Shown here: one piece after another, positions 13,401 through 49,616 of the stretch | Numbering within the stretch: the stretch's first letter is position 1 | Layout: each line of letters starts with the position of its first letter | Source: Haliotis rufescens | Lineage: Eukaryota | Reading direction: 5' to 3' | Length of the DNA stretch: 64,000 nt | Assembly (NCBI RefSeq): GCF_023055435.1 | Contig: NW_025963868.1 | Span: 15,438,001 to 15,502,000, forward strand | Notes under the pieces: model-generated | What the model was told of the DNA's origin: nothing | The model's input: only the letters and a program-made list of their open reading frames with translations | Databases searched by the model: none | Translations under genes and position numbers: made by a program

Positions 13401-15504
13401 GTCAACGTGATCGATACAACGGGCACAGGCAATAGTTGTTATCATCAGGTTGCGAAAGTCGTGGAGGAAAATATATTTTTACCTACCAGTCGCTTTCCTG
13501 TGTTTCCAATTAGATATGGACATGTCGTGTTTATTTATTTCTACTTCCGAAACGGGACATTTTGAAAATTGAGTTTTGTCTGGTTTCTCACAACATGTTC
13601 AATATATAGGTTTGTGTATGATGGATGGGGGCAAGAGTACGTCCACGATCTGCGCCACTCAGGGCTGACCCCGCCCATTACGCTGTGATATATCTAACCT
13701 GTATATTAACTCACTCCAGAGTCAGACGCTGGTACACATGTACAGCCGTGTCACTGACCGATGTAGACATTGAAACATTCCTACCCCAATATTCTGAAGC
13801 CTCCGTCATTTCAGATTCAGATTCCCCCATAATCTTTACACTGTCCGCCTGGACGCCAGGTGTTATCACTGTACAATTATAATAATTCATGTTTCATATT
13901 GTGTTGTAATCAATCTGTTCAGGTGAATCTACCATAACAACTCCAACTCCCCCACCGACTGCGACAACACCAGTACACTGCGCTGGCAATGTCACCCCAT
14001 GTTGTACGTAACACTTCTTGGTTTAGCTCACAGCAACGCCAAGACCATGTTAACATAACTTAGTAAAGTCTTGAACTATTTACCAAGGTAGATACAGTGA
14101 CTAGGCCATTGGGTCATTACATTCAGGTAGGGATACCAGACAGTATGGTAAAGCCCTCATACGTTTTGGTAGATAGGGAATAATAAATTTAATATGATTG
14201 TAATTAAAAAAGACATTATTTTTTTTTTATTCTTAAAATGCGATTTTATAAAACGGCCGTGTCTTCAATGACACTACAGCTTCTAAATATTTCTGTGTTG
14301 AGATGAGGTATCTGATTCGGGTAAGAGTTTCTGCATGACATCGCTCCAAGTCCAGTACCACATGAAGACACATGTTCCTGTTGGTGGTGTTTCAGATTCA
14401 ATCCTCGCCCCAGTAGCTGCTGGTGTTGGAGCTGTGCTCGTCATCGCCGTTGCTGTCAATGTCCTCATCTGGTACCGAGTGATGGGAACACACAGGCAGA
14501 AAACCAAAGGTGAATGAAATCATTGAAATGGAACTTAAATTAGTATATTAGAATTCTCCATTCAACACTGTGTGGTTTGTATGGCGTTCATCCTAACTTT
14601 AATAGGTTCTATAACATATGTCCTCAGCTAATGCACCCTCACAATACAGGTACAGTATGTCCCGACAGCGGTGGTGATTCCTGTGGTATTTACAGGTGAC
14701 TGAAGGTGATGGGGTGCAGGAGGATATTCAATCGCTCAAATGGAGTTCCTTGTTCATAATTATCAATGTCAAGCCACCACTGTTCACTAGGGCAATATAT
14801 AGATAGTTACACTAGTAGTCAAAGCCATAAATGAGTTGCTGTTGATGTTGATGAATCATGACCCTAGGAAATCGTTGTCATTAAGAACCTATTCCTATCC
14901 GAGGTATACCGAAGGGAAAAATATGAAGTCAGTGTTATTTAGAAACACAATCCTATCTGCCGTTTATGGTACGTATATTTCACTGTGTGAAGTACAATTC
15001 TGAAACACCTGTAAACACAGGGGACGGTCGGGTAGCCTAGTGGTTAAAGCTTTCGCTTGTCACGCCGAAGACCCGGGTTCGATTCCCGACATGGGTACAA
15101 TGTGTGAAGCCCATTTCATTCAGTCAGTCTAAACACAGGTCACTGACAATGTACTTCCAGATGTAGAACCAAGCACAGAAGAAAACGATTACAATTTGAC
15201 GCCTAACGGATGTAACCATGACAGCGGCATCTACACCGACCTCGTCGGCATCAGACCGGTGTCTCTCATTGAACCAATGTACAGAGACGCCATGGAGATG
15301 CACAGTGACCTTTACATCCACGCTGTCGACGACGAAGCTACCTACGAGGACACTGCAGTGCCCAGCAACCATCCCGACATGTTACAGGAAGGTGTGGCAG
15401 CGTCAGCTCATCAGGCTGAAGACTCGGTGTCGAGGCCCTGCATGTCACTGGACACAACACACACACCATCAGATACTGTTTATCGTCACACTAAAAGTGA
15501 ATGA
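10438..15504 (+). CDS. Gene A: single V-like Ig-domain membrane receptor with multi-Tyr tail (~320 aa)
   Basis: Exons: 10438-10504 leader, 10780-11136 Ig (LTC...WYR...DAGSVWTC), possibly 13815-13859, 13923-14003 T/P stalk, 14396-14509 TM, 15161-15504 tail. All introns are GT-AG, phase 1; sum is 963 nt without the optional exon. AATAAA near 15826. Confidence 0.8.
12847..13316. mobile_element. Cluster of MITEs of the atggtggccgagagggga TIR family
   Basis: TIR pair 12847-12937; further right ends near 13156 and 13316; TCGCTTTC-type internal repeats. Confidence 0.65.
15020..15129 (+). mobile_element. tRNA-derived SINE (family 2), shortened copy with TSD TAAACACAGG, in last intron of gene A
   Basis: A box tagcctagtgg and B box ggttcgattcc; TSD at 15012 and 15130. 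Confidence 0.85.
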
Positions 15505-16056
15505 CAAATATTTTCATATTTGATAGGGATTTACGTAGGTCTAAGCATCATTCCCGCAATATTATCGCGGAATGATGGTTTTAATTTAAGGCGGGAGAAC
15601 AAATATATCTCAGGATTTGAGTAGGAACTTGGAAGAGGCTATGATTTTGGTATTTATTTTTTTTCCGTAGAACTCGTTTTACCACTTCATTAAGGGTTAT
15701 TGTTTGAGATGGTGTAGGCGACGTCGTAATACATGTATGTCATAGTCGAATAATTAGTTTATTTAACATATGCTTTTATTACAGTATCCAAATATATGTT
15801 TTTGTTAATTCAAATTGGTTGTATGAAATAAAGAGCATACATTACTCGTAATTCTTTGTGTTCTGATTCCTCATCACGACAGGTCTTTCCAAGAATGATT
15901 ACTATAAATAGCACATTTACATTAATGAATACATTGTGTAATGTCCAGAGCTTTTGTGACGTCAGGAAGAATGGATGACACTATGTTCAATAACGAAAGG
16001 GATATGACGTCAGAATATGCCCCCAGTGTGCCCCCAAGACTCGAGAATGGATGATC

Positions 16057-22125: not shown

Positions 22126-23366
22126 TATACACACATTCGTACAAGTTGAATGGCAGGTTGTGTATATGCTTATGTGCACTTGGTGCATCACATCTGAAGT
22201 ACTGGGTTTGGATTTGGAAGTCATCCTCGTACTTCCAAAGGTCACAAGAACCTCCCTTCCTCAACCATCTCCACAACAGGGAATCGACGTTGGGAATTGA
22301 TGATAAGCCACAGATACCTCTCTGCAGACTCTTCTGTTATCAAGGGACAAGGCTGAAAAACCCTTCCTTGGCGTTCATACCAAGCCTCCCAAACAAATTG
22401 TCCACACCTTCAAGTTTCTCAAGTTCCACGATTAAAGGGAACAGACTCCAAGGAAAAAACCTACAGTATATGATTCAGTAATTGGTTGGGTACACATATA
22501 TAAATTTACCTGTGTAGAAACGGTAGACACGTAAGTTCAGGAATATTAGAATAGCACATACAATATGTGACAAATGATTACTACCATTGTGCTCTCTCCC
22601 ATTACTGAGATACATGTGTAAGGGACCCCATAGACAAGGTGACGAAAGCGCGTCCCCCACGACGTGGTTACATTTATCTTTGTGTAAGTGGTCCGAGGGG
22701 ATTCCTAAGTTGACACGCCAAGGTTAGCACGGGACTCGTCATGTGCAGAACTAAATTGACCTTGACATTGCGAAACTTCAACAGATTGGATTTACACCAG
22801 TGAGTAAAATTTGTCTTAAATTTTGTTTATTCAATGTAAAGTGACATAAATGTGAAAAAATATTACCATGTGAATATCCATATCGTATAAGAGGAAGAAA
22901 TCCCACGCTGCTTCAAACATATCAACGAGGAAAGTTTCACTTTTACAATTAGCATTGTGCAGTATTCATGCATTATAAACTACCGATAAAGTCAAGTACA
23001 AAGCTTAAATAGTGTCGAGATTACATGATAATTGCGCATTGTACATTGGAGGAGTTAAATCTAGCAGCGTTCTCAACTGGACGGTTGTAGTATGCCTGTC
23101 TGGCCGCTTCGATGCCGCTATAACTGAGGGTAAGGTGTTTTTGTTTCACGCTGCACTCAGCAATACCGAAGCGTCATGAGGACGGTCTGTAAATAATCCA
23201 GTGTGGACCCGACAATCCAATGATTAAAATGATGAACAACAATTCCCGCCGTGGGGTACGATGACACGCAGTGAACTTGCATCAGATTATCAAATGTAAT
23301 AACTAGCATAGAGCATATTTGTATCTTTCGAATATTTTCTTTTGCAATAACAGACAGGTCTTGAGG

Positions 23367-26300
23367 ATGGGATGGACGTCGGCGAGGCGTCGTTGGGTCT
23401 CTGCTCTCTGTCTTCACCTTCTGGTCGTTCATGGTTTGTATAGTGCGTTACATCCCAGTAAACAAAACGTACACTTCACCATACATTATTTCCGAAGTTT
23501 GCTATGTGCACTTAGCCAATAACAAGAAGCAAATAAGATAATAATATTTCTGATTTTACTATGCGAAAACATGATATATAATGAACTGGGTAGATCCGAG
23601 ATGCGGAAAATAAAAGTCGGTTCATAGCTCACTTCATCGGAAGCCAAAAAGCATCATAGTCGACAATTGTTTTTTGTAAAAGATGCTTTTTGAATATTTA
23701 AGCTGCTGCCAATTAATCTGAGTCAGTGTAAATTGTTATAAGGGTCAATGGCGGACCGCCGATCTCTAACAGCAGAACACGGCCTATCAATAGATTCAAG
23801 AAATACATGGTTTTATCTTAATGTTGCATGCTCTTAGAACTTGTCGCTTCATGGCCTTGGTAGAATTACTGGTGAATAAGTAGCATACTTCTAAGGCGTA
23901 GGCGCTTCCACATACCATGTGATCTGACTCGTATATTGAGAATTCATCTCACTGAGGTTTTGAATGAATATATGCTGTGTTAATTCTACACTTGCAATCG
24001 GCCAAATATGTGTGGGTAACATGAAACTTTTAGTTACATTATGTTACAGACTACAGATGCTACAGTATGTAGGATCAGCCATGTCATATAATATATAGAT
24101 ATATGATTTATGTATTTAATTTCCTTCACATAAACTGATTTAATGGAAAGCACATACGTTGTGATATGTTGCTTATATATCACACTAGACAGTACTTACA
24201 GTATTCAAGTAATATGTCATTGTACAGACAAATAGCTACACACATCTTTCATTTATTTCACACAGCATCTTCGTTGAAGTACCACCTTACATCTACACCA
24301 GCTATAGAAGGGCAGCCATTTACTCTGTCGTGTAGACAAGATCATACCATAGGAACTGCATTGTGGTACAGGAACTGGGTCCGGATTTTTCAAACAAATA
24401 GGAATTACCAGTTTGAGATGCTTGAAAAGAACACTGATCACGAGGAGTTCCGGTCTGTGTCAGGACGTATCTCTGTGCATGCAACTCTGATCCGACACAA
24501 CGTGATCCTCACCATCAACTCTACACTGGATGAGGGATCTGTGTGGAGGTGTGGTCTAGGGGAGGATTCTAGTGATAACCTGACAGTAAGGGTGGTCAAG
24601 CCAGTCACTGGTATGTAATTCGTTGCGGGAGACCAAGTAAATGTGTATGTCACTAGTATTATTTCACTGACAAAATCAATGTCTCCAACAAATCGCGATT
24701 TCAATAATTTCAGACACTTAATACGGGATCTATGTGGAGTGTAGGGGAGTATGATATCATCAACCTGACATTAACGGTAACTGATTCCACACGTGGTACG
24801 ACATTCACTTTTTATAAGGTATCACATGCAGCAGACTCAACATACATGCCAGAGGGTTACTCATACCCTCTTACTTAAGTCCACGTAAACCTGAAACTAT
24901 ACTGACTAATTAAGTAATCATCTTGATGTACTATGTCATGTGCATGTGTGGACATCTTGATCGTATTACTCCAAAACATTACAATACATTGATTGCTCCT
25001 CTAGATGCTAAACACGCATTCCACAGTTCTGCATTAAATGACGACCTAATTACTGGGTAGGGGTCGATATACAAAATATCCAAATCTTAAACCCAATACA
25101 ATACTTAATACAATCATAATGGCTAGTTTATTCTTCTCTGTAAGCCCGGCGGGCGTCAGAGCTGGTTCAGCCTTAGTGTAGTGGCACCAGAAGACTACTT
25201 GACAGAGCATGATGCTATACCTACATTCATGGATTTCCCGGTCTGGCGCTCGGCATTGAGGGGATAAAACAAGGACTGGTCGGCTCGGTGTCAGTTTTCT
25301 GTGTCTGAGTGGGGTATTCATGTTAAACTGCGGCCTGGTATCTCAGTGGGCTAGCACTATAACATCGGCATTAATGCGGACTTGTAGATTCAGCCACACA
25401 CACACATGCATGCACGTAAGTGCAATATTCTTGAACGCGACTTTAAACCCCATTTCACCTCACATCACCTCACCTCAACTCGTACATTCATAAGCGAGAT
25501 ACCCTTGCTTGTTTAATGATAATACTCATAAAATCAACTGTCCATATTTTAAAAAATTTGCATTTTATAATGTTCACATATTTCGTGACTACTATAGTTC
25601 GACACACCTTAAAAGCGTGTAATGACAAGAAAGGAAATAGAAAGTATAATTCTTGTGATTAACTAGAAAAACAAAATTAACATGAAAATTGCAGGAAATG
25701 GAAAGAAATGCTGATCACAGATAAAAGTTGCAATTGGATGCTTGTTTCCTGTTGAGGCACAGAATCGATCAGCAACACGGGCGTTTAGTACACAAGTATC
25801 ACACTTGTTAACCTCAGTATATCCCTGTGAAATAAGGATCATGTGTTATATCGATAACAATGTTTACCTTTTAGAAATATATAAATACTGTTTAATGTAG
25901 CTATGTCCCCACTTCACTCTCACTCACTCACTCACTCACTCACTCACTGTTCAGGTGAATCCACCACCAGAACTCCGACTGCCCTTCCAACTGCGACAAC
26001 ACCAGTACAGTGCGCTCGCGATGACACCTTTTGTAGTAAGTAGCGCTTTCTGATTTTAGTTCATATCAGTGACAGCATCACCAAGACCTAGTTAACATGA
26101 TTCACACTAGTTCAAGACTTGAACTACTTTCCACGTTAGATAACGTAACTGGACCGTGTTAGGTCATAACATTCCCCGACAAAGATGATATAGCAATCGG
26201 ATATTTTGTTAGGTACATATTGGAGAATAAATTTAAAATTGTTGAATATATAAAAGAAATCTGTTTCAACGCCTTTATTTATAAATCGGCCGTGCCTTCA

Positions 26301-28562
26301 ATGGTACTACAGCTTCAAAAAACCACTAACACAAATCCTAGTTCTATGTTGCATCTGATTTAAGTTAATATTCATTTCTGCATGACATCGCTTCTAGTCA
26401 AGTACACCATTGAGACAATTTGTTACAGTGGGTTTATTTTCAGAACCAGTCCTCGTCCCAGTAGCTGCTGGTGTTGGAGCGACACTCGTCATCGCCGTTG
26501 CTGTCAATGTTCTGATCTGGTACCGAGTGATCGCAACAAGGAAGCAAAAAACCAAAGGTGAATGAAATCATTCAAATTGAAACTATATACTCCCCAAACA
26601 ATAAAGGGGTATTACAAAATAACAGAATAACACAGAAATACAGAGAGGTGTCGAGTTGTGGTAATATGTGGGTAAGAAAAGGAAGGGCTAGGTGTAACAT
26701 GACAATCAATAGAACACGTTGGAGATGTATTGTAAGGGTGTAAATAACTAAGCAATACGACACAAGTGTCAAAATAATTAATATTTGAGGTGACTTGACA
26801 AAAAATGGGTGACACGATTGTTCAAACATTCGTTTATACCACGAAGCATGGTCCGAATCAATCTCCCAATGACAATTTGGGGGTGTCTTTCCATTCCTCT
26901 TATAGCGTCTGGACCAGTTCGGCTGATGAAGCGAGAGGCCTCTAACGTCGGCGTACACGTCTCCAAATCATGCTTTATAGGGAATGCTCAGGACTCTTAA
27001 TTAGTTTGCTGCTGGAGGTAGTCAGTCAAGGTGGGCACGAACGTTGTCGTACTGAAAGACAAAACGTGGATCAGCATTGCGCGGAAACCAGTGTCGCCAG
27101 CATGTTGTCTCGGTAGTTCGGTCCAGTGATCCTTCTGTGGAAGTGCAGTGGCGCTCCGACAGTCACAGTGATCCCGCCCCTTATCATTTCAGACCCAACC
27201 CCAACTCTGTCGTGTTGCCTGACGTTGACGTTCGCATGGCGCTCGTTACGACACCTCCTAGACACGTCCACGATTTTCCAGAAGGTCCAGAGTGAATCTG
27301 GAAACATTATACGAAACTATCGGATACACCCCGAGTTTCTACGCCCATTGGCGTCTGGAGAGAATGTGTCGATTCGTTGACGGTGGTACATGACGTAATG
27401 GTCGAGCATGCAGAGTAGCTGCATGCAGATGAATTCTTGTTGTTTGGTTATTAACTTGCCTTCTGGTGGCATGGCGCAACCGAACAGACATTTGATTGGC
27501 TGTTTAGGCTCGATTTCTGATTAATCTATCCTTGACTTGTGTTGTTGAGCTTGGGCGAAATGTGCGGTGCCTATCATTAAAACTGTGTGTCTGCAGAAAC
27601 CTGTTCCAAAGTCTGTTAAGGACAGACTGAGACACATCGAACGCACTGACTACCTCTCGCCGAGTTCTACCAGTTTGAAGCATGCCCATATCCCGTTATT
27701 GTTCGTCACGTTGTAGGCGATGCATTCCCAATCTGATAACAAATACTACAGTAGATGAAGAGAAGTATACGTGTTACTGGGGATAATGAAACTCATGACC
27801 AATGGCTCAGAGCGATTTGACGACCTTCTACTGAAGTGTCAAACTCAATAATGTCCCCTAACCCATGAGCATGGATGCATTGCAGGGTCCAGGAACAACG
27901 TTTCGGGTGTGTTGGGGCGTTTGGTTTGGTTCACTGGCTGTCATTTTCCAAAGCTGATCTTTCTTCTGAAGACCGATGGAAAATATATCATACATGATCC
28001 CCTACTCATTTTAGAGAGTGTTAATACTAAGTGGTTTGTACGTCTTCCATCCTGATGTTAATATGTTCTCTACGTCACAATATGTGTACAATACGTTTCG
28101 ACACTGAAGGGAATTCTGCCTGACATATTAAGAGAGGGTGGTCAGTCATGGTGCGTGTCATCATTATTCCATGGCGTGGCCCTGCTCATGCCTTTAGTCA
28201 CTAGTAAGTTATGTGCGTATGTTTACGAGTTGCTCAGACTTTCATCATTGAACAACGACCCCTCAATCAATCCACGCATACCTCTCGGTGCCAACTCTCG
28301 GTGAAACAAATCCTAATAAATGACACTTTCAGATAAAAAAGCCAGCACAGTAGAAAACAACGAGTACAACTTGACGACCTATGGCGATCATCATGACAGC
28401 GGTGACTACTCCGACCTCGCCAGCATCAGGCCAGTGTCTCTCATAGAGCCGATATACAGAGACGCCATGGAGATGCACAGTGACATCTACATCAACGCTG
28501 TCGACGACGAAGCTACCTATGAGAGTCCTGTGTGGGTCCGGGACCATCCCGATATATCCTAA
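23367..28562 (+). CDS. Gene B: single V-like Ig-domain membrane receptor with multi-Tyr tail (278 aa)
   Basis: Exons: 23367-23433 (MGWTSARRRWVSALCLHLLVVH), 24266-24610 Ig, 25955-26035 stalk, 26444-26557 TM, 28333-28562 tail; 837 nt, open frame. Leader, stalk and TM exon sizes (67/81/114) equal those of gene A. AATAAA near 29092. Confidence 0.85.
25140..25480 (+). mobile_element. SINE family 3 with conserved central domain (Meta-domain-like); second copy at ~47410-47730
   Basis: Both copies share ggcgctcggcatt...aacaaggactggtcggctcgg...tgtctg...gttaaactgcggc.tggtatctcagtggg. Confidence 0.65.
25912..25948. repeat. (CACT)n microsatellite abutting the acceptor of the gene B stalk exon
   Basis: Read directly. 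Confidence 0.95.
26750..27730 (-). pseudogene. Decayed Tc1-like transposase in last intron of gene B
   Basis: GMLQTGRTRREVVSAFDVSQSVLNRLWNRFLQT...RPSSTT HTH region plus degenerate DDE segments. Confidence 0.75.
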
Positions 28563-29299
28563 TGTTGCAGTCAGGCGTGGTCGCCAATCATTAAAGTGTC
28601 ATCGATGCTTATGAAATTGGTTACAGCTTGCTGTCCTTATTAAGTAACTTCGATTTGTATAAAATAAGTTAGCTGAGTGTGCAGGTCGCGCCACGTTGAT
28701 CATGGGAATCGGTCTGATAATAATTGTTTTGTCAGCACCATACCCGAGCTGTTGGGGGCTTCACACAAGAGGTGAAAGTCATCAACCCCCACATCAAACT
28801 GAGACCGTGGTATACATGTTGTGGAAATTCTGTCCGAGGCAACGTTAAATTCTGTTCACTAACTGTATCAAAAAAGCAAGATGTCACAGACGTTACTGGA
28901 ATAAGTCAAGTAGTGTTAAATATATTAGTTTTGTTTTCCGTACTGACGTTATGCAACAACATTACGTGTATTTGTTGGAGATGGTGTGGGTGATCATTTT
29001 GGGTTACCTGATAATAGGTAATAGTCTAATTGGTTTGACATACGCTTTAATACAGTAACTGAAAAATAGATAATTGAAAATGGTTATATGAAATAAAGAG
29101 GATAGATTGCTCGTTCGATTTTTTGCTTCCTTATGATGACAGGACTTGTAAAGAATGATTATTTTGAATAAAACATTTTGCATTTATGAATTAATTGTGT
29201 GGTACCAAGAGCATTTATCTGTCTGTCTGTCTGTCCGTCCGTCCGTCTGTCTATCTGTCTATCTATCTAATATATATATATACAGAGTCAAGATTTTCG

Positions 29300-29700
29300 T
29301 GTTTGTCAAAACTCACAGTGGATAAAGAGTTTTGACAAGTGTGGATAAAGGAGTTTTGACAAGCCCTATTTTTACTATATTTGATACATATATACCTGTA
29401 GAAGAGAGAGACTGTTGTGTCATTGTCACATTTGTAAATCGGGAATATCACAAAATATGGTGTTTTATTCCCAGCACACTGATAAATGTGTTGACCGAGT
29501 GGGATACAACGGCAATAGGGGGTCCCTTATTTGTTGTCGGAGGACCTTCAGCCTCGCCCTTAGGGTATCCCCTGTCTGTCCAATGTATTCAACCTTGCAT
29601 TCAGCACACTGTGTGACATAAATCAAACTTTTCGAAGCACAATTCATATTTTCACCGACACAGAGTGTTTTCCCGTCTTTGAATGTGAAAGAACAACATT
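29300..29700 (-). mobile_element. Penelope-like element fragment (GIY-YIG endonuclease)
   Basis: NCASKSLIYVTQCAECKVEYIGQTGDTLRARL matches the Penelope C...IY...CxxC...YIGQT...R motif. Confidence 0.8.
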
Positions 29701-33375: not shown

Positions 33376-34984
33376 GTTGTGAGACGTGAGTGCAGTTTAT
33401 ATTTATGTATCTTAACTTGAGATAAGGTTCAGTACCTGATAAGTTTATAGATCAAATCTACCCTACTTCATGTTTGATCAGGCATCTAGCTTGCAATTTT
33501 GTTGAGGACAAACTATGTGCCCTATGATGGATATTTTCGGACACACCCATGTCCTCTAGTGATCCAAACTTATTAGGCAATTTGATTTGGTGAGGAGTAT
33601 CCGTTTTCACCCATGTCAAGTCTCTTTGGCAGTTTATTGACAAAGTGGATATTAGCGAAGAGCTTAATTTCAGCGCAGTGGTCAGAGGGTGTCCTAGTGA
33701 CGGATGCGTAAGTTTCATTTGGCTCTTGGGTTTGGACAAGTGTTTTTGCAGCAGCAACACTGATGTCCTTGTGAACTTAATTATGTAAATGTTCCTTGTT
33801 GTTTCCAGAAGATATGTGATTTCCTGAACAGGCCCCCGGTACATGAGTATTTTCTCTGCAATGTCGTGTAGATCGATGCTCATGATGGCATTTACTGAAT
33901 TGTCTTTCCAGACTTGATATTTTTACAGACCGCCGTCATACAGCTGGAAAATTGCTGATTGCGGCGGCGTTAAACAAAGAAATAAAGAAACAAATAATCA
34001 CTGCACTGAACAAATGAAATAGATTTTGTGCAAATATTCACACCATGGACGTATATTTGGCATTTGAAACATCTCAGAGGGGTCTCATATAAGGGGTGCA
34101 TACATTTGTTATGGTGAAAACATCACCAACGACGTGACCAACAACATTAAAAGGCACACCACTGGTATGACACATAACAATACAAATGATACGACTGAAT
34201 CTGATTTTTGATTCACCTGTAAACATATAACAATTTGTTTCAGGAATTATGGTTACCTTACTGAGATTTCAAGGCATGAGGTTTCACTGTGCAATATTTA
34301 TTGTATGACATAAATTGATATTTTGAAAACGATATTACCCCGTAAATATGCACATCGTATATGAGGAAGTAGATACCGCTCCCTCAAACATATCAGCAAG
34401 GAAAGTTTCACACGTGTGCAGTATTCATGAATGATAATACTTATAATAAGGTCATGTACGGAATTATATTTGTTGACATTATATACAAATTGCACACTTT
34501 ACATTGGTGGAGTTCAATAACATCGCGTTCTCGACTGCATGATTGTCGCAGGTCTTGCCACTTCGATGCACCAACAACGCAAGGTAAGGAATGTTTTGTT
34601 TAACGCTGCACTGAGTAATATTGAAGCTATATGTATATAATTTAGTATGGACCAGACAATACTGTGAATGATATAACGAACAAGGATTCATGCCGTGGGA
34701 TACGATGACAGCAAACAGATCAATTTACCGAGTCAGACCACCCGTTCCTTGGTGCCTGTTGAAAGTAAAACTATTTCTGCTTCCAGGGCACGAATGGCAC
34801 AGTCGTCTAATTAAGGTATCGCAATTCGCTGTACAGAGCTGCGTCGTTTGGACATGCCAGACACATGTACCTATAATCGTGGGATGGAATCCCGGCTCGC
34901 CCTGATAATGTGTCTTGGTCTTTAAGCACCATATCCGTGCTCGTTGGTTTCACCAAAGTGGTAAAGGTGTGCACCATTTCGGGC

Positions 34985-35660
34985 TTTCCTCCTTCCGTGA
35001 TATCACTGCAATACTTTCCTCCTTCCCTGATATCACTGCAATACTTTCCTCCTTCCCTGATATCACTGGAATACTTTCCTCCTTCCCTGATATCACTGGA
35101 ATACTTTCCTCCTTCCCTGATATCACTGGAATACTTTCCTCCTTCCGTGATATCCCTTCAATACTTTCCTCCTTCCGTGATATCACTTCAATACTTTCCT
35201 CTTTCCGTGATATCACTTCAATATTTTCCTCTCACGCCGTGATATCACTGAAAGACTCGTCCTTCCGTGATATCACTGCAATACTTTCCTCCTTCCGTGA
35301 TATCACTGCAATACTTTCCCCCCTCCGTGATATCACTTCAATACTTTCCTCCTTCCGTGATATCACTTCAATACTTTCCTCCTTCCGTGATATCACTGCA
35401 ATACTTTCCTCTCACGCCGTGATCTCGTTGGAAAACTTTCCTCCCACGCCGTGATATTACTGGATACTTTCCTTCCACGCCGTGATGTCACTGGAATACT
35501 TTAATTCCCTCCTTCCGTGATATCACTGGAATACTTTCCTCCCACGCCTTGATATCACTGGAATACTTTCCTTTCACGCCGTGATGTCACTGGAATTTTT
35601 TCCTCCTTCCGTGATATCACTGGAATACTTTCCTCCCGCGCCGTGATATCACTGGACTAC
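34985..35660. repeat. 30-bp minisatellite (TTTCCTCCTTCCGTGATATCACTGCAATAC) inside a SINE-like element
   Basis: Tandem units followed by ...gcgtcgttaaacccaactcactcact tail. Confidence 0.9.
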
Positions 35661-36153
35661 TGTCCAAAGCGTCGTTAAACCCAACTCACTCACTGGCTCA
35701 CCCCAAGTAGAATCGTTGCATATGCTGTCAAACACTGGTCTGCCTTTATTTACACACACACCCCTCCTTCTTGACACAGCTGTTATATTGCTGGATACGG
35801 AGTAAAAAAAATTTCATTCTTTCAAATAACAATAAAATAGATTGTCCTCCTGTAAACAAATCAATGTTATTGCAACATTCTTGTCCAAAAGAAAACCATG
35901 ATATATCTGTTGCAACAGATTTTATTTGTAAACATGTCACAAACATGAGTATGAGCACGTGCTTGCGTGCGTGCGTGCGTGCGTGTGTGTGTGTTTGTTG
36001 ACACGCACCCGTATCTTGGTTTTTTAATGTTTAATGTTTATACACCCGAAGAAATCACTTCCACTATATTATCAAATGTAATAACTATTAGAGAGCGTAT
36101 TTGAATCTTTCGAAGTCTTCGCATATTTTCTTTTGTAATAACAGGTCTTGAGG

Positions 36154-39100
36154 ATGGGGTGGACGTCGGTGAGGCGTCGTTGGGTCTCTGCTCTCTGTCT
36201 TTGCCTTCTGGTAGTTCATGGTTTGTATAGTGCGTTACATAAGGTAGTTGCTTTTCATTGTGTTAATGTCTGGTTTTGTTTTCTCTACAGTGTTATTTCT
36301 CATTTTACTCTGAGATAACATCATGTACAACCACGGGGTAGATCCGTGATGTGTAAAATTGTCGCTTTATGAACTTGGTAGAATTTCTGGTGAAAAGGTT
36401 ACAAACTCGTAAGGCGTGGTGGCCTCCATGTACCTTATGATCTCACCTTGTATATTGGAAATTCATGTCACACAGGTTTCGCAAGACCTGTGTTAATTCT
36501 ATACTTGTAATCAGTCAAATTCTGTTCACTGTGCACATGCATTAAAAGATAATATCATATGTATTGGTAACATGAACATTTTAGTTACATTACATTGCAG
36601 CGTAATACTTGCTACAGTATGTAGAAATCAGTCATATCATATAATATATACATATATGATTAATGGATTATATTTTCTGCACTTACACTTATTTATTGGA
36701 CAGTGAGTGAGTGATTGAATATTTATAGTCACATCGGCAATTTTTCAGCCATATCGTGACTAAATCAAGTTAGTTTTATTGGACAGAACATACGTTGTGA
36801 TATGTTGCTTTATATCATACTAGACAGAACTTACAGTATTCAAGCAATATGTTATTGTACAGACAAATAGCTACACACATCTTTCATTTATTTCACACAG
36901 CATCTTCGTTGAAGTACCGCCTTACATCTACACCAGCTATAGAAGGGGAGCCATGTACTCTATCGTGTAGACACGATCACACCATAGGAACTGCACTGTG
37001 GTACAGGAACCTGGTCCGGATTTTTCAAACAAATAGGAATTTCCCACTTGAGATGCTTGACAGGAACACTGATCACGAGGAGTTCCGGTCTGTGTCAGGA
37101 CGTATCTCTGTGGATGCAACCCCGATCCGACACAACGTGATCCTCACCATCAACTCTACACTGGATGAGGGATCTGTGTGGAGGTGTGGTCTAGAGGAGG
37201 ATTGTAGTAATAACCTGACAGTAAGGGTGGTCAAGCCAGTCACTGGTATGTAATTCGTTGCGGGAGACACAGTAAATGTCATTAATATGTCACTATTATT
37301 ATTTCACTGAAACAATCCATGTCAGAAACAAATCGCGATTGCCACAAATTCAAACACTGGATAAGACATCTATGTGGACCTGGCGCGTAGGGGAGTATCA
37401 TTGTAGCAACAATAACAGTAACTGAATCCACCATTCACAAAATGAATGGGAGATGTGGTTCTGACTCGGATGTTGGTGAATTTACGTACGTAGATCATAA
37501 TGGGACCAGTGTCATTGATTATGTTATATGTTGACCACAATCTTTTCATTGCTGTACTGATTTTACTATTACACCAAGAGCTGAATCATCGCATCTACCT
37601 GTCACTGTCAGCCTACAATCAGCAGATGTCACATGTCCTAGACATTTAGGTGACACACCTAGTAATACAGGTGATTGTTCAAGTTTGTGTGGGATTATGA
37701 TAAGAACGAGCAATTTCAAGATGCTTTTTTACTCTGATAGTGTACACGAATTACTTCACAGATCAATGGAAGTGGCACTCTTCTAGGATTATTCTCTCAC
37801 AGTTTCGCACGTCGAGCAGTGATCTTATGGTATCACAGGGTAGAAAGTTAGGTATTCCAAAGTGTGAAAGACTTTGTCCATTTTGTATCATTCCAAGTGT
37901 AGAAACAGAATACCATGTTTGTTTAGTTTGTCCGTTTTATGACGATCTTAGAAGAAACTTTCTGCCAAGTTATTATTATACATCTCCATCAGAGCATAAA
38001 TGTAAGGTTTTATTTACCACCAGTAATGCTTTCACAATCAATAATCTTGCCAAGTTTACATTTTTTGCTCTTAAAATGAGGAGCAAGCAGTTGTCCATTA
38101 TATAAACTACTAATTCTACCACCATATGTATATGGTCTCAGATACCCTTGTACGGATTAGTATTGATATTACTACATGCACTTGTGGCGCAACATGTTTG
38201 AATGCTTGAATATATATATTGTAAAATGGGCCTGTGGCCTGATTTACTGAAATAAACCACTACTACTAATGGGAGTGGCACTAACTGATATTAATGAGAG
38301 TGTGCAATGTTTGGTTGAAGGATTGTGTTAGTCATATATGTGTATGAGAAGGAAAGTTAGTCGAAGTATTACAGATAAGAAATGGTTTGATATTGAGTGT
38401 GAATTCCTCACAAAGAAAAGATGTAGGTGCTTTAATATACATAGAAAAAATAAAGATGCAGAATCCTTATCAATTTACAACCAGGTTAGAAATAAGTATA
38501 ATAGTACATGCAGAAGTAAAAAAGGCAATACAAGGCGAGACAGCGAGAAAAACTAGAAAGTAGCATAAAGTATCCAGAAACGTTCTGGTCTACTCTCAAA
38601 CACTCGGATGGTAAGAGACAGGTTTATAAAAATGACATAAACATAGATACCTGGAATATACATTTGAGAGACTTATTTTCTTTTGACAATAACAGTGAAG
38701 ATTTGCAGGAAGACATCGAAATAAACAGTGAATAGGCTAGTTTAGTAGCTGACATATTATATTTTCCTATTTCAAGAGAAGAAATCACTTCAAATATACA
38801 AAGATTGAAAAAAGAAAAGTCTCCTGATATTGACAACGTAATACCCGAGTTTTTTAAGAATTCATCAGATATAATTGTCTCATATTTAGAAGTGTTGTAT
38901 AATGCTATTTTTGAACATTCCAATTTCCCAAAGATTGGTCAGTGGGCATTATCATTCCTTTTCACAAACAAAGGTAATGTAAATGATACCAATAGCTACA
39001 GAGGCATCACATTATTAAGCATACTGAGTAAAATATTCTTAGATATCATTAATAGAAGATTAGTATTTTGGGCTGAATCATTTAAGAAAATAGATGAGAC

Positions 39101-42100
39101 ACAAGCTGGTTTTAGAGAGGGGTACTCAACTATAGACAACAGTTTTGTGTTACATTCCTTAATTCAACGTTATTTATCAAGTAAATGGGGGAAAAACGGA
39201 TGCGTTTTTTGAAGGTTTTTCTAAAGCATTTGACTCAGTTAACCGTGATAAACTTTGGGCCTTGCTTAAATTACAAAGAGTAAGCAGCAAGATGTTGAAA
39301 CTGTTATCAAGTATCTATGAACAAGTAAAGGCTTCTGTAAGAAGTAATGGCAAGTACTCAGAAGATTTTGAATGCAATGTAGGCGTTCGACAAGGATGTA
39401 TATTAAGTCCTTTTCTCTTTACTTTCTGGGGCGGTCGGGTAGCCTAGTGGTTAAAGCGTTGGCTCGTCACGCCGAAGACCCGGGTTCGATTCCCGACATG
39501 GGTACAATGTGTGAAGCCCATTTCTGGTGTCCCCCGCCGTGATATTGCTGGAATATTGCTAAAAGCGGCGTAAAACCATACTCACTCACTCACTCACTCT
39601 CTACTTTCTTTATTAACGTGCTGGCAGAAGAAAAACAAAAAACAGCTACACCCAGATAGTGTTAAAATATTTTTGCTTCTGTTTCCCGATGATGTCGTAA
39701 TGATTCCGAGTACTGTACCCAGATAGTGTTCGACAAGGATGTATATTAAGTCCTTTTCTCTTTACGTTCTTTATTAACGTGCTGGCAGAAGAAAAACAAA
39801 AAACAGCTACACCCAGATAGTGTTAAAATATTTTTGCTTCTGTTTCCCGATGATGTCGTAATGATTCCGAGTACTGTACCCAGATAGTGTTCGACAAGGA
39901 TGTATATTAAGTCCTTTTCTCTTTACGTTCTTTATTAACGTGCTGGCAGAAGAAAAACAAAAAACAGCTACACCCAGATAGTGTTAAAATATTTTTGCTT
40001 CTGTTTCCCGATGATGTCGTAATGATTCCGAGTACTGTACCCGGACTTCAAAGTCAGATAAATGTGCTGGAGCAATTTTGTGAACAATTTGGTTTAAGTG
40101 TTAACACAAAAAAAGAACAAAGTTATTGTGTTAAAAAACGGCGGTATGTTATCAAAAAGGGAGAAATGGTTTTACAAAGAAAGTTACAAGTTATAAATAT
40201 TTGGGAGTACATTTTTCTATAAAATTATCTTGGAATTTCCATTCAATACAGGCTGCAACGCAAGCAAAGAATAGTCTTTATAGGGTACAAAAACGTCTCA
40301 GATCTATTGAGAGTATAAATTTTAATCTATTTTAAATTTTTTTACACAAAATAAAGCCAATTCTACTATATGGGGCTGAGGTTGGGGTGTACATCAGCTA
40401 GATTTGAATGAAAGGGTGCATGTATATGCATGCAAAAGGTATTTAGGAGTGAAGATAAACACCCCCAATGTAGTATTGGTTAAGGTTATTAAGGTTGCCA
40501 TATGATAGATACCCAAGAAAGTGTTATGAAATGATGGTATTGTATGACAAAAATGGAAAGCAAAACTGGGTTCCGTCGGTTAAAAAGCTCAGTGATGATT
40601 TAGGCTCAGGTTATGCTTGGCAAAGTCAAAATTTAGATTGTCCTGAACATTTTGTTAAATTGTGTACACAAAGGCTCTAAGATACGTACATACAAAAGTG
40701 GAATTGTTTGTTAGCTTTAACGTCAAAATGTCAGTACTTGAGTTTATTTAAAACACAGTTTATAACTGCAGAATATCTTTTTAAAACCACTCTTGTACAA
40801 ATATAGAATTGCATTTTCTAGATTCAGATGCTCATAACATGAATTAAATATGGAAACGGGAAGATATTCCAAAATCCCAAAAGGAATTAGATTATGTAAA
40901 ATGTGTAATCTACAGCTAATAGAGGAATCAAAAGTCAAGAATCAAGAATTTTTATTGTACAGAACACCCTCGTAGGGCAGGGTACAAACTATCTACATTT
41001 GGGAATAAATATAACTATAAACATGAAAGGTAGATATACATAATGTACATTATAGATGAGTACCATTTTGTTCTCTTTTGTCCATTTTATCAGAATTTAC
41101 GAATTATATACCTACACCCATCAATGTACTAATTTCCAAATATATTTAAGTTTAATGAATGATATCTTCTACAAGTATCAATGTTCTGAAGCCTTTGACT
41201 GCGTATATATTCCATGCGATGGATTGTAGAAATGACAAGATGAGTGACTTAAATAAGTAGAAATCAATATGTCCATCCACTATCCACAAAGACACGTACT
41301 ATAGGCCTATGGCCTTTTAGTATTTCTGTAAGAAAGATTGATTGAAAGATTGATTGAACAAAGAACCAAATCGTTTGCCATAGACTTCTGTTGTAACGTT
41401 ATATTTTATCTTAATAATAGGGTACTCAACAACCATGTCATGTGCATGTGTGAATATCGTGATCTTATTACTGCATTGCATTACAATGCATTCTGCATTA
41501 AATGGCGCTTACTTGAAATTATATGCGGACACAATAGCTTCACTGATGATTCAAAGAGAATACAGGACAGGGATATTGACAACATCTTGGTCAGCTTTAA
41601 TTACTGGTGGGGGTAGATATATAAAACATCCAAATATTTGATTGAGAAATATCTCGAATCCGGAAAAAGAATCAGAGTGCCGGACGTAACAATATTATGA
41701 TAGATATATGTTTCTCTATACTGACCTATAGTTCCGTCAACAAAACTCCGAAACCCAGATCACTGGTCACAGTTGTAATTTGATGCATGAGATTCTGTTG
41801 AAGTACACAATTGATCAATACAAAATATCACACTTGTTATCCTTAATATTTTCCTGTGCGTTAAGGGCCATGCAATATTTCGACAGTAAACGTATATGAC
41901 TTTTGAGAAATACATGACTATTTAACTACGAAGTCCAAAAAGAAACTAATAATAATTCACAAGAATAAAATACTCACGCTGCTGGGGATGTACGTTGAAT
42001 GAACGGCTTCATTAACACATTCAGGTGCACAACAGATAGATGTGTATCATGTTTTAGTGTTTTAGTGTTTTTCATGGAAGTATTAACAAGGGATAAACAA

Positions 42101-47274: not shown

Positions 47275-49616
47275 ATGGATATATACAAGCTCTCAGTCAT
47301 ATCTTTGGTCATAATGAGGACAATTGAAGGTAAGTTGCATGGGTGGAAATTCTTTACTTATTTCCTGGATTTCTACTTTGAGGAGAGTTGACCTATTTCA
47401 TAGAACAGACGGTCTCCGTGTTCTCGAGTACAGAGCATCTAAGAGAGTGGAAGGTAAGTGGTTCGATCGCCTGGCCGCGTCATACCCAAAGACGTCGAAA
47501 GATGGTACTTGTTACCTTGCCAGGCGCTCGGCATTAAGGGGCTAAAACAAGGACTGGTCGGCTCGGAGTCAGTATATCGTGTCTGGGCGGAGTCCAAGTT
47601 AAACTGCGGCATGGTATCTCAGTGGGTTCGCATTACAAAACAGACATTAGTCCAGGACCAGTACAAGCAGTGACGCAGCCACGCACGCACACGCACACAC
47701 ATGTTCGTCGCTTTAAACGTCAAACCCAATTTATCTTTGCTGTAGAGGAAACTGATTATGAGTTTATATCGCGAGTCAATTGTTACAGTTATCAAGCATA
47801 GAACAATAGGTACACATGCCTTTTGTGTTTTTCGCACAGCATCTTCGTTGAAGTACCGCCTTAAATCTACACAAGCTATAGAAGGGCAACCGTGTACTTT
47901 ATCGTGTAGACACGATCACACCATAGGAACTGCATTGTGGTACAGGAACTGGGTCCGGATTTTTCAAACAAATAGGAATTACCAGTTTGAGATGCTTGAC
48001 AAGAACATTGATCACGAGGAGTTCCGGTCTGTGTCAGGACGGATCTCTGTGGATGCAACCCTGATCCGACACAACGTGATCCTCACCATCAACTCTACAC
48101 TGGATGAGGGATCTGTGTGGAGGTGTGGTCTAGGGGAGGATTCTAGTAATAATCTGACAGTAAGGGTGGTCAAGCCAGTCACTGGTATGTAATTCGTCGC
48201 GGAAGACCAAGTAAATGTTATATATATAACACAAGTATTATTGTACTAAAACAATCCATGTCTGAAACATATAATATCACGATTTCCGAAATCCCAATAA
48301 ATGTACTGCTGGTGAATACCGAATGTATTTCATGAATTACTTAATAAGGTCAAATCGGTGGGTTCTTTATGTAGATGTGGTCAGGTTTGGTAAAGTTTGG
48401 TCTAGTTTTAATGCCTACAGTTCACGCTCTTGTCAATATACTTACAAGATACTTTTATATCTTCAGTTTGTCCTTATAACATTATGGTTCTTGTCACAGA
48501 CGGGAGTACAACCACCCAACCCCAGACAACATCCATCGTTAGCAAGACAACTACAACTACAGAAGCTATGACAGAAAACAAAGGTTTGTTAAAGTTTTCC
48601 CGAGATTCAAGTATTTATGGCCAAACGTGCAAAGAAGCGTTTAAAAGCCAGTCTAGTTTTAATATTCTTCCTTTCAATTGTCATGTTTATGTTATGGCGT
48701 TGACACACAGGGCGCCTGGGTACATTGGAATATTGTGTACATATACAAGTGTATATATGAGTTACTGTGGCACGTACGACATGATGACATAACAGTGTAC
48801 ATTATGTGTTATTGCATTACAAATGACACTGTATATCAATCTTTTTTAAGTGAAAAAATATGGAACTAAATTGCACATATAAGTTTTATACAGATCAAAA
48901 ATCATATTTCATCTTCAACACACACCCCTCTATTATTTATTCTTTTGTCGCAGAATATCCGGCAACCCATGCCTTTATCCTAACCATGTGTGGAACTGCC
49001 TGTTGTCTCACCCTTGTCATAGGCAGCACCATAATCTTGTTTGCGAGGAGTCGCCTCACAGCTGGACCCGGTAAAAGACTTCACAGTATATATGATGAAA
49101 TATACTTGACAATGCAATAGATTATGTTACTTAAATGATCGAGAAGAGTTCGTTTCCGGTAACAGACATAACAATCAATTCTTTTATAAACTAAAGTTTT
49201 CGCTTGGGAGGACGTGGGTTGGGCAGTGAGTGAGTGGGTCATCAAATTGCGCAGAACAAAGAAATATTCAACTGTTGAAAAACAATAGTCATCGTTTAAC
49301 ATGTACATCTGCGCCATATGTACGAATTCAGAAAAGTGAAACATTTTTTAAAATGATACATTTACATTCCGCTTTGTCCCGTTCATAGTTTTGGTGATTT
49401 TGACAGCTTTTGACTGCAGGGAACTGTAAAATATTATCTGTTTACAAGCTGTCTGATGATACAAGTTGGTAACGTACGATTCATAATGTCCAACTCTGAG
49501 ATCGGACGTAGTGTTTTAGCTTTTAAAGCCTAAGTACACTGACAATTATTTGATCTGTTGCAGATGATAAAACCACAGCAGGATCTCAAGCAAGACCACA
49601 GCAGGCCAGACAGTGA
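47275..49616 (+). CDS. Gene D: single V-like Ig-domain membrane protein with short Tyr-free tail (217 aa)
   Basis: Exons: 47275-47329 (MDIYKLSVISLVIMRTIE, donor gtaagt), 47840-48184 Ig, 48500-48583 Thr-rich stalk, 48954-49070 TM (AFILTMCGTACCLTLVIGSTIILFA), 49564-49616 (DDKTTAGSQARPQQARQ*); 654 nt, open frame. Confidence 0.75.

What the first reader, a model, noticed from the sequence alone, without database searches (positions are those of the whole stretch)
23300..29215. Gene B is a mosaic with a switch point mappable to ~60 bp
B's upstream region, leader, intron 1, Ig exon and much of intron 2 align to gene C (22860~34330, 23300-24790~36080-37430, 25030-25090~41490-41640, 25735-25880~41780-41900). 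From the stalk exon on, including introns and 3' UTR, B aligns to gene A (25948-26580~13916-14530, 28325-29215~15150-15950). The switch lies at ~25890-25950, on a (CACT)n run like the local SINE tails. Inference: unequal recombination between paralogues created a new sensor/tail combination.
Basis: partly seen in the sequence, partly recalled or inferred. Interest (0 to 1): 0.75.

Follow-up and report, generated by a model that had tools for sequence, protein, structure and literature searches.

The report
Old chimeric abalone Ig receptor gene
One gene in a tandem cluster of abalone surface-receptor genes really is a hybrid, with the front of its downstream neighbour and the back of its upstream neighbour, but the hybrid is old and was made by a textbook kind of duplication.

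Summary
Gene B (window 22826-29217, + strand) matches gene C from 541 bp upstream of its ATG to 25908. From 25947 to the end of its 3' UTR it matches gene A. The 38-bp switch interval (25909-25946) is exactly the (CACT)n run.

The order A-B-C, the single junction, and equal non-coding divergence of the two halves (K2P 0.41 against 0.42) fit one tandem duplication. That duplication ran from intron 2 of A to intron 2 of C, the "anti-Lepore" layout. The breakpoints lie at non-equivalent intron positions, so this was not a clean homologous crossover.

The 94% B-C identity over the Ig exon is a later event. It is a gene-conversion tract of about 0.55 kb, also shared with gene D.

B is not a recent novelty:
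- Public protein models identical to my A and B models are named Haliotis rufescens.
- H. cracherodii has a 278-aa B orthologue.
- H. rubra has a model that also joins this Ig type to this tail type.

No read contig bridges the microsatellite. The two intergenic copies show no homology.

The scan had already noted similar abalone Ig-receptor clusters elsewhere in this genome. This is a new member of a known kind, of moderate interest.

The parts
22826..23135 (+). B upstream region, single-copy, homologous only to C upstream (34297-34600)
   Evidence: In the own-genome DNA search, query positions 1-310 hit only B itself and C. blastn gives 70% identity.
23136..23270 (+). SINE copy shared by B and C at the same place, so inserted before the duplication
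   Evidence: Query positions 311-445 hit many genomic copies (1325 first-look candidates). The C copy lies at 34601-34714, K2P 0.31.
23367..23433 (+). B leader (signal peptide) coding exon, phase 1 donor, C-like (92.5% to 36154-36220)
   Evidence: Gene model. It is identical to public protein P0002. RNA contig record 16 splices 23353-23432 to 24265-24610. Identity.
24266..24610 (+). B Ig (V-type) exon, phase 1-1
   Evidence: 93.9% identical to the C exon. Cys22, Trp33 and Cys95 are invariant in 23 family exons. AF2 pLDDT is 93 and the top Foldseek hits are V domains. Pfam V-set scores 17.7 bits, below the cut-off of 26.
24136..24700 (+). Later gene-conversion tract shared with C (36772-37340); gene D shares 24231-24693 (47805-48272)
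   Evidence: Non-coding flanks inside the tract have K2P 0.092 (CI 0.052-0.135), against 0.411 outside it. Exon dS is 0.07-0.11 among B, C and D. Private changes in the exon: B 9, C 12, D 8.
25909..25946 (+). Switch interval, the (CACT)n-like run at the junction of the C-like and A-like halves, 8 bp upstream of the stalk exon
   Evidence: Alignments. Pattern scan. Read contigs of three DNA runs stop at 25900-25909 and restart at 25955.
25955..26035 (+). B stalk exon, A-like (79% nt to 13923-14003)
   Evidence: RNA-run depth is present in this bin and zero in the flanking intron bins.
26444..26557 (+). B transmembrane exon, A-like (85% nt to 14396-14509)
   Evidence: RNA contig record 21 starts exactly at 26444. 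This exon type has only 2 copies in the genome.
28333..28562 (+). B last coding exon, a tyrosine-rich cytoplasmic tail (6 Tyr; one YxxL, one YxN), A-like (78% nt)
   Evidence: This tail type has only 2 copies in the genome. RNA contig record 22 covers 28424-28889.
28563..29217 (+). B 3' UTR. The distal part, 28926-29217, is homologous to A 15654-15956, and homology ends there
   Evidence: nhmmer; blastn. The proximal part, 28563-28929, is not alignable to A (K2P 1.03).
13915..15956 (+). Gene A tail unit (stalk, TM and tail exons, introns, 3' UTR), copy 1 of the duplicated unit's left end
   Evidence: The A model (exons 10438-10504, 10780-11136, 13923-14003, 14396-14509, 15161-15505) is identical to public protein P0001.
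34297..41938 (+). Gene C head unit (upstream, leader 36154-36220, Ig exon 36901-37245, intron 2 up to the breakpoint), copy 2 of the unit's right end. C's own stalk, TM and tail exons follow at 42165-42221, 42432-42548 and 42983-43302
   Evidence: The C model matches public protein P0004 from the MGW start onward. The C tail is unique in the genome.
47840..48184 (+). Gene D Ig exon, a third copy of the homogenised sensor exon (D leader 47275-47329, stalk 48500-48583, TM about 48954-49070)
   Evidence: Public protein P0011.

Best explanation
The window holds four tandem, same-strand genes (A, B, C, D). They belong to an abalone family of single-pass membrane receptors. Each has a leader exon, one V-type Ig exon, a stalk exon, a transmembrane exon and a tail exon, and all the introns between these coding exons are phase 1.

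Gene B is a chimera. Its 5' half (upstream region, leader, Ig exon, most of intron 2) descends from the same ancestor as the 5' half of C. Its 3' half (stalk, transmembrane and tyrosine-rich tail exons, their introns and the 3' UTR) descends from the same ancestor as the 3' half of A.

The most likely origin is one tandem duplication of the segment running from the end of A's intron 2 to a point in C's intron 2. Such an event leaves A and C intact and creates a hybrid at the junction between them. This is the layout of an anti-Lepore globin duplication.

The junction lies in an intron and the flanking exons are in the same phase, so the hybrid reads through. It is transcribed and spliced.

The joint was made between non-equivalent intron positions and now carries a (CACT)n microsatellite. 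This points to illegitimate or repeat-mediated joining rather than a clean homologous crossover. That step is inferred.

Long afterwards, a tract of about 0.55 kb around the Ig exon was homogenised by gene conversion among B, C and D. As a result, three neighbouring genes now carry nearly the same sensor domain on three different tails.

Shown: the mosaic, the junction, the equal divergence of the halves, the conversion tract, the splicing of the leader exon to the Ig exon, and conservation in a sister species.

Inferred: the single-event mechanism, its polarity, and any receptor function.
For: 1. Collinear two-unit structure with B at the joint: 13915-15956 ~ 25947-29217 and 22826-25908 ~ 34297-41938.
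2. One switch. In one search, 22 of 31 windows left of 25900 are nearest C and none is nearest A. To the right, 13 of 33 are nearest A and none is nearest C. The end of C-homology and the start of A-homology coincide within 38 bp. Two independent replacement events would match this well only by chance, roughly 38 in 6400.
3. Equal age. Non-coding K2P for B-C outside the tract is 0.411 (95% CI 0.355-0.478, n=698). For A-B it is 0.416 (0.360-0.481, n=657). An unrelated control gives 1.17.
4. The A and B heads are old paralogues. The leader exon is 40% identical, which is random. The Ig exon is 60% nt and 48% aa identical. Tail exons are 78-85% nt identical. In the Ig tree, B, C and D form a clade (98/94) and A lies outside it.
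5. There are no spare partners in the genome. The A/B tail and TM exons have 2 copies only, and the C tail has 1. This argues against a mis-join.
6. Independent gene models. Public proteins P0001 (320 aa), P0002 (278 aa) and P0004 equal my A, B and C models.
7. Expression. A contig of run X15 (its RNA label is a guess) joins 23353-23432 to 24265-24610. Other X15 contigs cover the TM exon and 28424-28889. Depth is zero in the intron bins.
8. Age and conservation. Contigs of a related species (X12, about 95-97% identical) lie on both sides of the microsatellite. H. cracherodii has a 278-aa protein with a B-type tail that is 95% identical.
9. Later conversion. Tract flanks have K2P 0.092 and exon dS is 0.07-0.11. 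D_cra is closer to B_cra (95%) than to D_ruf (91%). The two H. rubra Ig domains are identical.
Against: 1. The two intergenic copies that a single duplication predicts (15956-22852 and 29217-34323) show no homology by nhmmer --max. Part of this DNA is younger repeat: the satellite 16056-19097 and elements at 20421-20740, 21299-22140 and 31997-32860. B's intron 4 is also only 1-in-18 windows alignable to A. The rest of the gap is unexplained.
2. No listed read contig bridges 25910-25954. The tool skipped that repeat and listed only 30 of about 49,400 pieces. The physical join therefore rests on the assembly, the annotation model and an RNA contig whose last 57 letters were not listed.
3. An H. 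rubra model (P0003) joins a B/C/D-type Ig domain, behind a D-type leader, to an A/B-type tail. That tail is no closer to B (61%) than to A (59%), while A-B is 70%. No A-type head was found in H. rubra (one search returned 3 proteins). This can be read as the B-type combination being ancestral. The difference, 42 against 55-56 changes in 138 sites, is not significant, and P0003 is an unverified prediction.
4. The K2P equality partly reflects choice of alignable segments. The proximal 3' UTR is unalignable (K2P 1.03) and was left out of the A-B estimate.
5. The breakpoints are at non-equivalent positions, and neither parent keeps a (CACT)n run there.
Confidence: 0.6

Rival explanations
1. Two-step origin without a junction-forming duplication. 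B began as a whole-gene duplicate of C (or of A). Its 3' half (or 5' half) was later overwritten by a long gene-conversion or replacement tract copied from A (or C).
For: - Gene conversion is clearly active in this cluster: the Ig-exon tract among B, C and D and species-wise similarity.
- The intergenic DNA on the two sides is not homologous. This model does not need it to be.
- The beta-globin paper states that conversion can give chimeras structurally similar to crossover products (PMC4041002, passages read).
Against: - It needs a 3.3-kb tract running from the last bases of intron 2 to the end of the 3' UTR.
- It needs the duplication and the replacement to have the same age (K2P 0.411 against 0.416).
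- The order A-B-C with the hybrid in the middle would be coincidence.
- No trace of an older B tail or head remains.
Confidence: 0.2
2. B carries the ancestral head/tail combination, and A and C are the derived chimeras. A gained a copy of B's tail and C gained a copy of B's head.
For: - The H. rubra model P0003 couples the B/C/D-type Ig domain to an A/B-type tail. Its tail is not closer to B than to A.
- The search with A found no A-type head outside H. rufescens (3 hits in all).
Against: - It needs at least two separate events whose boundaries fall within the same 38 bp of B and have the same age.
- P0003 has a D-type, not a B/C-type, leader, so H. rubra has had its own reshuffling.
- P0003 is a prediction in a family where every exon joins in frame with every other, so mis-joined models are possible.
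- The protein search is word-limited.
Confidence: 0.12
3. Assembly artefact: a false join of a C-like contig end and an A-like contig end at the microsatellite.
For: Short-read contigs of all three DNA runs break at 25910-25954, and none listed bridges it.
Against: - Contigs run into the repeat from both sides. In X1, record 3 has 32 unlaid letters and record 4 has 25.
- The same flanks occur in a related species (X12).
- The genome holds no other partner for either half.
- NCBI models in H. rufescens and H. cracherodii give the same 278-aa protein.
- RNA-run depth falls on the stalk exon and not on the neighbouring intron bins.
Confidence: 0.02

Closest known systems
Anti-Lepore type chimeric duplicates in the beta-globin cluster (HBB/HBD fusion flanked by the parental genes)
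   Same: - The hybrid gene lies between the two parents.
- It carries the 5' part of the downstream gene and the 3' part of the upstream gene.
- Copy number rises by one.
- Later interparalogue conversion blurs the picture (PMC4041002, abstract and introduction passages read).
   Different: - Here the parents were already very divergent (Ig exon 60% nt, tails not alignable at DNA level).
- The joint lies in an intron at non-equivalent positions and carries a microsatellite.
- The exchange swaps whole protein modules (sensor against stalk, TM and tail), not parts of one domain.
Vertebrate paired or multigene Ig-type receptors reshaped by conversion and crossover (Siglec-11/16, KIR2DS4/KIR3DL2, CEACAM1-related receptors)
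   Same: - Neighbouring genes keep near-identical extracellular domains by gene conversion while carrying different cytoplasmic tails.
- They sit in tandem clusters of Ig-domain receptors.
- Sources: PMC5701461, start of abstract in the listing; PMC2768862 and PMC2110893, titles and abstract starts in the listing.
   Different: - No sequence relationship beyond the Ig fold.
- No canonical ITIM in the A, B or C tails, and no charged transmembrane residue.
- The ligand, cell type and signalling are unknown.
- The family is so far seen only in Haliotis proteins.
Other tandem Ig-receptor clusters of this same abalone genome noted earlier by the scan (s1-811082, s1-816321)
   Same: They are described as abalone-only tandem Ig receptor genes that share outer domains but differ in tails, or share a tail but differ in heads. 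These are AI notes and were not checked here, except the organism name.
   Different: They lie on other pieces of the genome. Here a dated junction and a dated conversion tract can be read directly from three neighbouring genes.

Membership tests
Immunoglobulin V-set domain (Pfam PF07686) | Score at or above Pfam's gathering cut-off | tested here: not met
   The scores are B 17.7, C 14.4 and D 15.9 bits against a cut-off of 26. A matches only Ig_3, at 15.7 against 30.
Immunoglobulin V-set domain (Pfam PF07686) | Conserved Cys...Trp...Cys core and Ig beta-sandwich fold | tested here: met
   C22, W33 and C95 are invariant in 23 family exons. The AF2 model has pLDDT 93.1 and pTM 0.86. The top Foldseek PDB hits are nanobody, TCR and antibody V domains, with probability 1.00 and TM 0.56-0.70.
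Anti-Lepore type unequal-crossover duplicate | Hybrid lies between the parents, with the 5' part from the downstream gene and the 3' part from the upstream gene | tested here: met
   The order is A (10-16 kb), B (23-29 kb), C (34-43 kb). B's head matches C and its tail matches A.
Anti-Lepore type unequal-crossover duplicate | A single junction, with both halves of equal age | tested here: met
   The junction is at 25909-25946. K2P is 0.411 against 0.416, with overlapping confidence intervals. One caveat applies: alignable segments were chosen.
Anti-Lepore type unequal-crossover duplicate | The two copies of the intergenic DNA inside the duplicated unit are homologous | tested here: not met
   nhmmer --max finds nothing between 15956-22852 and 29217-34323. 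Repeat turnover explains only part of this.
Anti-Lepore type unequal-crossover duplicate | Crossover at homologous positions of the misaligned paralogues | tested here: not met
   The breakpoint is 8 bp before the stalk exon on the A/B side and 227 bp before C's stalk exon. The last 100 bp of A's intron 2 are 40% identical to B, which is random.
Paired activating/inhibitory immune receptors | Near-identical ectodomains on neighbouring genes with different tails | tested here: met
   B, C and D Ig exons are 94-95% nt identical. Their stalk, TM and tail exons are unrelated at DNA level.
Paired activating/inhibitory immune receptors | One partner has an ITIM; the other has a charged transmembrane residue or an ITAM | tested here: not met
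   The motif scan finds no ITIM and no ITAM in the A, B or C tails. C has one TxYxxV, and A and B each have one YxxL. There is no Lys or Arg inside the TM segments. D's annotated tail has no tyrosine (P0011).
Interparalogue gene-conversion tract | Locally low divergence that includes non-coding flanks and synonymous sites, with sharp decay outside | tested here: met
   K2P is 0.092 in the tract flanks and 0.411 outside. dS is 0.07-0.11. For D, the homology ends about 5-35 bp 5' and about 85 bp 3' of the exon.

The most novel reading that the evidence does not exclude
The cluster may be an invertebrate counterpart of vertebrate paired-receptor loci, built from interchangeable phase-1 exon cassettes. 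One V-type sensor exon is kept nearly identical by ongoing gene conversion across three or four neighbouring genes in at least three Haliotis species. Tails and even leaders are reshuffled between species. Gene B would then be a dated fossil of how a shared sensor is wired to alternative signalling outputs.
Probability: 0.3. Interest if true: 0.6.

Novelty: new member of a known kind. Interest (0 to 1): 0.4.

Why it matters
It gives a clean, datable example, in a mollusc, of the two processes that shape vertebrate immune-type receptor clusters. The first is a junction-forming duplication that swaps a sensor module onto another signalling module. The second is later gene conversion that keeps the sensor alike across neighbours.

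It also shows that within this abalone-specific family, which has at least 75 Ig exons in the genome, head and tail histories must be analysed exon by exon.

It does not reveal a new mechanism, and no function is known for these genes.

Tried and rejected
SINE-tail origin of the junction repeat. (CACT)n runs occur at about 10 places in the window, several beside SINE copies (SINE copies at 29932-30113, 39424-39602 and 15021-15117).

ITIM/ITAM labelling of the tails was rejected. I first read an ITIM-like SIYDEI in D by reading through a donor site. The annotated D protein, P0011, splices there and has no such motif, so I dropped it.

Pfam gave nothing for the three tails.

The own-genome search found no further A/B-type or C-type tails or TM exons.

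The search for homology between the two intergenic copies found none.

Rooting the tail history with H. rubra was tried. With three sequences and 138 sites the grouping is not significant.

Papers:
- Two full-text searches listed no paper on abalone Ig-type receptor clusters. I saw only the 15 and 12 rows listed of 29 and 1,410 papers. This covers that library only.
- Supplementary files were not consulted.

Rows dropped:
- Tree: 32 rows were kept. HSPs under 95 aa, HSPs with stops and exact duplicates were left out.
- Alignment A1: the 4 window exons plus 19 of 30 loci. L013 was left out for a stop codon. L001-L003 and L005, which duplicate the window's own exons, and L009, L012, L017, L027, L028 and L030 were not included.

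Read laying listed 30 of about 49,400 pieces and 15 of 302 joints. The exon 2-to-3 splice could therefore not be seen directly.


Full report
WHAT IS THERE

The window (GC about 40%, two N runs outside the region) carries four same-strand genes of one family. I modelled them from splice sites and reading frames.

| Gene | Coding exons |
|---|---|
| A | 10438-10504, 10780-11136, 13923-14003, 14396-14509, 15161-15505 |
| B | 23367-23433, 24266-24610, 25955-26035, 26444-26557, 28333-28562 |
| C | 36154-36220, 36901-37245, 42165-42221, 42432-42548, 42983-43302 |
| D | 47275-47329, 47840-48184, 48500-48583, about 48954-49070, plus a downstream exon |

Each gene has a leader, one Ig exon, a Thr/Pro-rich stalk, a transmembrane exon and a cytoplasmic tail. 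All the introns between these coding exons are phase 1.

The joined models were used only inside scripts to check frames. All searches were made exon by exon, and the joined step was left out of every search.

The models were later matched by public proteins that the tools returned:
- P0001 (320 aa) is identical to model A.
- P0002 (278 aa) is identical to model B.
- P0004 equals C, with an added N-terminal extension.
- P0011 equals D.

Their sources name them uncharacterized proteins of Haliotis rufescens, the red abalone. The protein atlas had already pointed to Mollusca. Two earlier notes of the scan say abalone.

THE Ig EXON

- It scores below Pfam's V-set cut-off.
- It keeps the Cys-Trp-Cys core in all 23 family exons aligned.
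- It folds with pLDDT 93.
- Its best structural matches are antibody-type V domains.
- The genome has at least 75 such exons.

THE OBSERVATION

In 100-bp windows of B, 22 of 31 windows from 22800 to 25899 are nearest C and none is nearest A. From 25900 to 29199, 13 of 33 are nearest A and none is nearest C. Shuffled windows never exceeded a score of 17.

C-homology runs to about 25908 and A-homology starts at 25947. The switch is therefore confined to 38 bp, and those 38 bp are the (CACT)n run.

HOW ALIKE, AND WHERE

A against B:

| Segment | Identity |
|---|---|
| Leader exon | 40% (random) |
| Ig exon | 60% nt |
| Stalk exon | 79% |
| TM exon | 85% |
| Tail exon | 78% |
| Intron 3 | 69% |
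| Distal 3' UTR | 67% |

In a tree of 32 family Ig exons, B, C and D form a supported clade and A lies outside it. The A-B relationship is therefore discontinuous.

B against C is also uneven:

| Segment | Identity |
|---|---|
| Unique upstream region | about 70-74% |
| Promoter/5' UTR | 89% |
| Leader exon | 92.5% |
| Intron 1, overall | 74% |
| Intron 1, last 130 bp | 93% |
| Ig exon | 93.9% |
| Next 180 bp of intron 2 | 83% |
| Distal intron 2 | 61-65% |

Non-coding K2P values:

| Comparison | K2P | 95% CI | n |
|---|---|---|---|
| B-C outside the high-identity tract | 0.411 | 0.355-0.478 | 698 |
| A-B non-coding | 0.416 | 0.360-0.481 | 657 |
| Flanks inside the tract | 0.092 | 0.052-0.135 | 219 |
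| Unrelated control | 1.17 | not computed | 530 |

One caveat applies to these values. I used whole intron 1, the whole unique upstream region and whole intron 3. From the 3' UTR I used only the alignable distal part. The proximal part is unalignable (K2P 1.03).

MECHANISM

Two collinear units, 13915-25947 and 25947-41938, sit head to tail with B across their joint. A tandem duplication from A's intron 2 to C's intron 2 produces exactly this: A intact, a hybrid with C's front and A's back in the middle, and C intact. This is the anti-Lepore layout described for beta-globin genes (PMC4041002, passages read).

Three findings favour one event over separate replacements:
- The equal divergence of the two halves.
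- The coincidence of both homology boundaries within 38 bp.
- The absence of any other copy of either tail type in the genome.

The upstream boundary of B-C homology (22826) lies in single-copy DNA. A SINE at 23136-23270 is shared by both copies, so it predates the event.

Three findings speak against a textbook homologous crossover:
- The breakpoints are not at equivalent intron positions: 8 bp against 227 bp from the respective stalk exons.
- Neither A nor C has a (CACT)n run at the site.
- The two intergenic copies show no residual homology.

Much of that intergenic DNA is satellite or young repeat. B's intron 4 is likewise almost wholly unalignable to A's (1 of 18 windows). High-copy read depth in 26666-28051 and around 28646-28843 shows repeats there. 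The gap remains the main weakness of the single-event model.

LATER CONVERSION

The Ig exon and its near flanks (24136-24700) are 91-94% identical between B and C. Gene D shares 24231-24693 at about 90% (94-95% within the exon itself), while D's introns are otherwise unrelated.

Synonymous divergence is 0.07-0.11, matching the tract's flanks, so the likeness is recent and not mere constraint. Each of the three exons has a similar number of private changes: 9, 12 and 8.

Across species:
- The H. cracherodii D domain is closer to the H. cracherodii B domain (95%) than to H. rufescens D (91%).
- Two neighbouring H. rubra genes have identical Ig domains.

Homogenisation therefore continues in each species. 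The high identity around the promoter and leader exon may be a second tract or constraint. I could not tell which.

READS

All four runs were laid.

DNA contigs:
- Two runs of the same species from two studies (X1, X3) and one run of a related species (X12, about 95-97% identical) reach 25900-25909 from the left.
- X1 and X12 restart at 25955 on the right.
- The tool skipped the repeat at 25910-25954, and no listed contig bridges it.

Run X15 (its RNA label is a guess, but depth sits on exons only):
- One contig splices 23353-23432 to 24265-24610. It has 57 further letters at its 3' side and 50 at its 5' side that were not listed. The 5' letters suggest an upstream non-coding exon.
- Another contig starts exactly at the TM exon acceptor, 26444.
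- A third contig covers 28424-28889.
- The bin holding the stalk exon has depth 4.89, while the intron bins beside it have 0.

The "other letters" reported inside the Ig exon are the C and D variants (compare). They are paralogue contigs laid at 92% likeness, not polymorphism.

AGE AND POLARITY

The non-coding divergence of the halves (0.41) is roughly ten times the 3-5% difference from the related species in X12. H. cracherodii has a 278-aa orthologue with the same head and tail (P0010). The chimera therefore predates that split.

In H. rubra:
- One predicted protein (P0003) has a D-type leader, a B/C/D-type Ig domain and an A/B-type stalk, TM and tail.
- Its neighbour (P0007) has a B/C-type leader, the same Ig domain and another C-terminus.
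- P0003's tail is 59% identical to A and 61% to B, while A and B are 70% identical. With 138 sites this is not significant.
- No A-type head was found outside H. rufescens. That search returned only 3 proteins and is word-limited.

The coupling of this sensor type to this tail type may therefore be as old as, or older than, the A/B tail duplication. Which gene carries the "new" combination cannot be decided here. Modules have clearly been reshuffled more than once in the genus, unless the H. rubra models are mis-joined. Mis-joining is possible because all exons are phase-compatible.

FUNCTION

Nothing is known. The A and B tails have six tyrosines, with one YxxL, and one YxN in B. C has one TxYxxV. 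None has a canonical ITIM or ITAM, and no TM segment has a charged residue. D's annotated tail is short and has no tyrosine. "Sensor" and "signalling tail" are inferences from architecture.

VERDICT

- The thing is an old, expressed, conserved chimeric member of an abalone-specific Ig receptor cluster. It was most likely made by one junction-forming tandem duplication and was later overprinted by gene conversion of the sensor exon.
- This is a known kind of event in a new family.

Noticed in passing
window 16056-19097: A satellite array of about 3 kb with a 78-bp period. Copies are 97-98% alike. It lies directly after the end of A-B homology.
   Followed up: no
window 3004-4076: A second tandem array with a 69-bp period, copies 92-96% alike.
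   Followed up: no
window 21299-22140: A young element with 205-bp terminal inverted repeats (21299-21503 and 21928-22132, 96% alike). It has many 88-99% identical copies across the genome.
   Followed up: partly
window 47275-49070 (gene D) and P0005, P0010, P0003, P0007: Ig domains of neighbouring genes resemble each other more within a species than between orthologues. H. cracherodii B and D are 95% alike, against 91% for D between species. The two H. rubra neighbours are identical. Leaders and tails are combined differently in H. rubra.
   Followed up: partly
P0003 and P0007 (H. rubra), start of the Ig exon: A 10-residue unit (YNLTSTPATA / YNITSTPVIT) at the start of the Ig exon is repeated five times in P0003 and three times in P0007. 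This looks like an in-exon minisatellite.
   Followed up: no
G000:C90:15516774-15520082 (L006), about 16 kb beyond the window's end: A further family member has two Ig exons, at 769-1062 and 1501-1812 of the locus. The second is 54-62% identical to B. Other members, such as L004, L010 and L016, also carry two Ig exons close together.
   Followed up: no
window 23353 and upstream; window 36140-36153: The RNA contig on B has 50 letters 5' of 23353 that do not lie on the stretch. The annotated C protein has an 18-residue N-terminal extension. Both genes therefore probably have an extra upstream exon spliced in just before the ATG.
   Followed up: no
window 34984-35665: A tandem repeat with a period of about 60 bp, copies 80-84% alike, is inserted in C's upstream region between the two blocks that align to B.
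   Followed up: no
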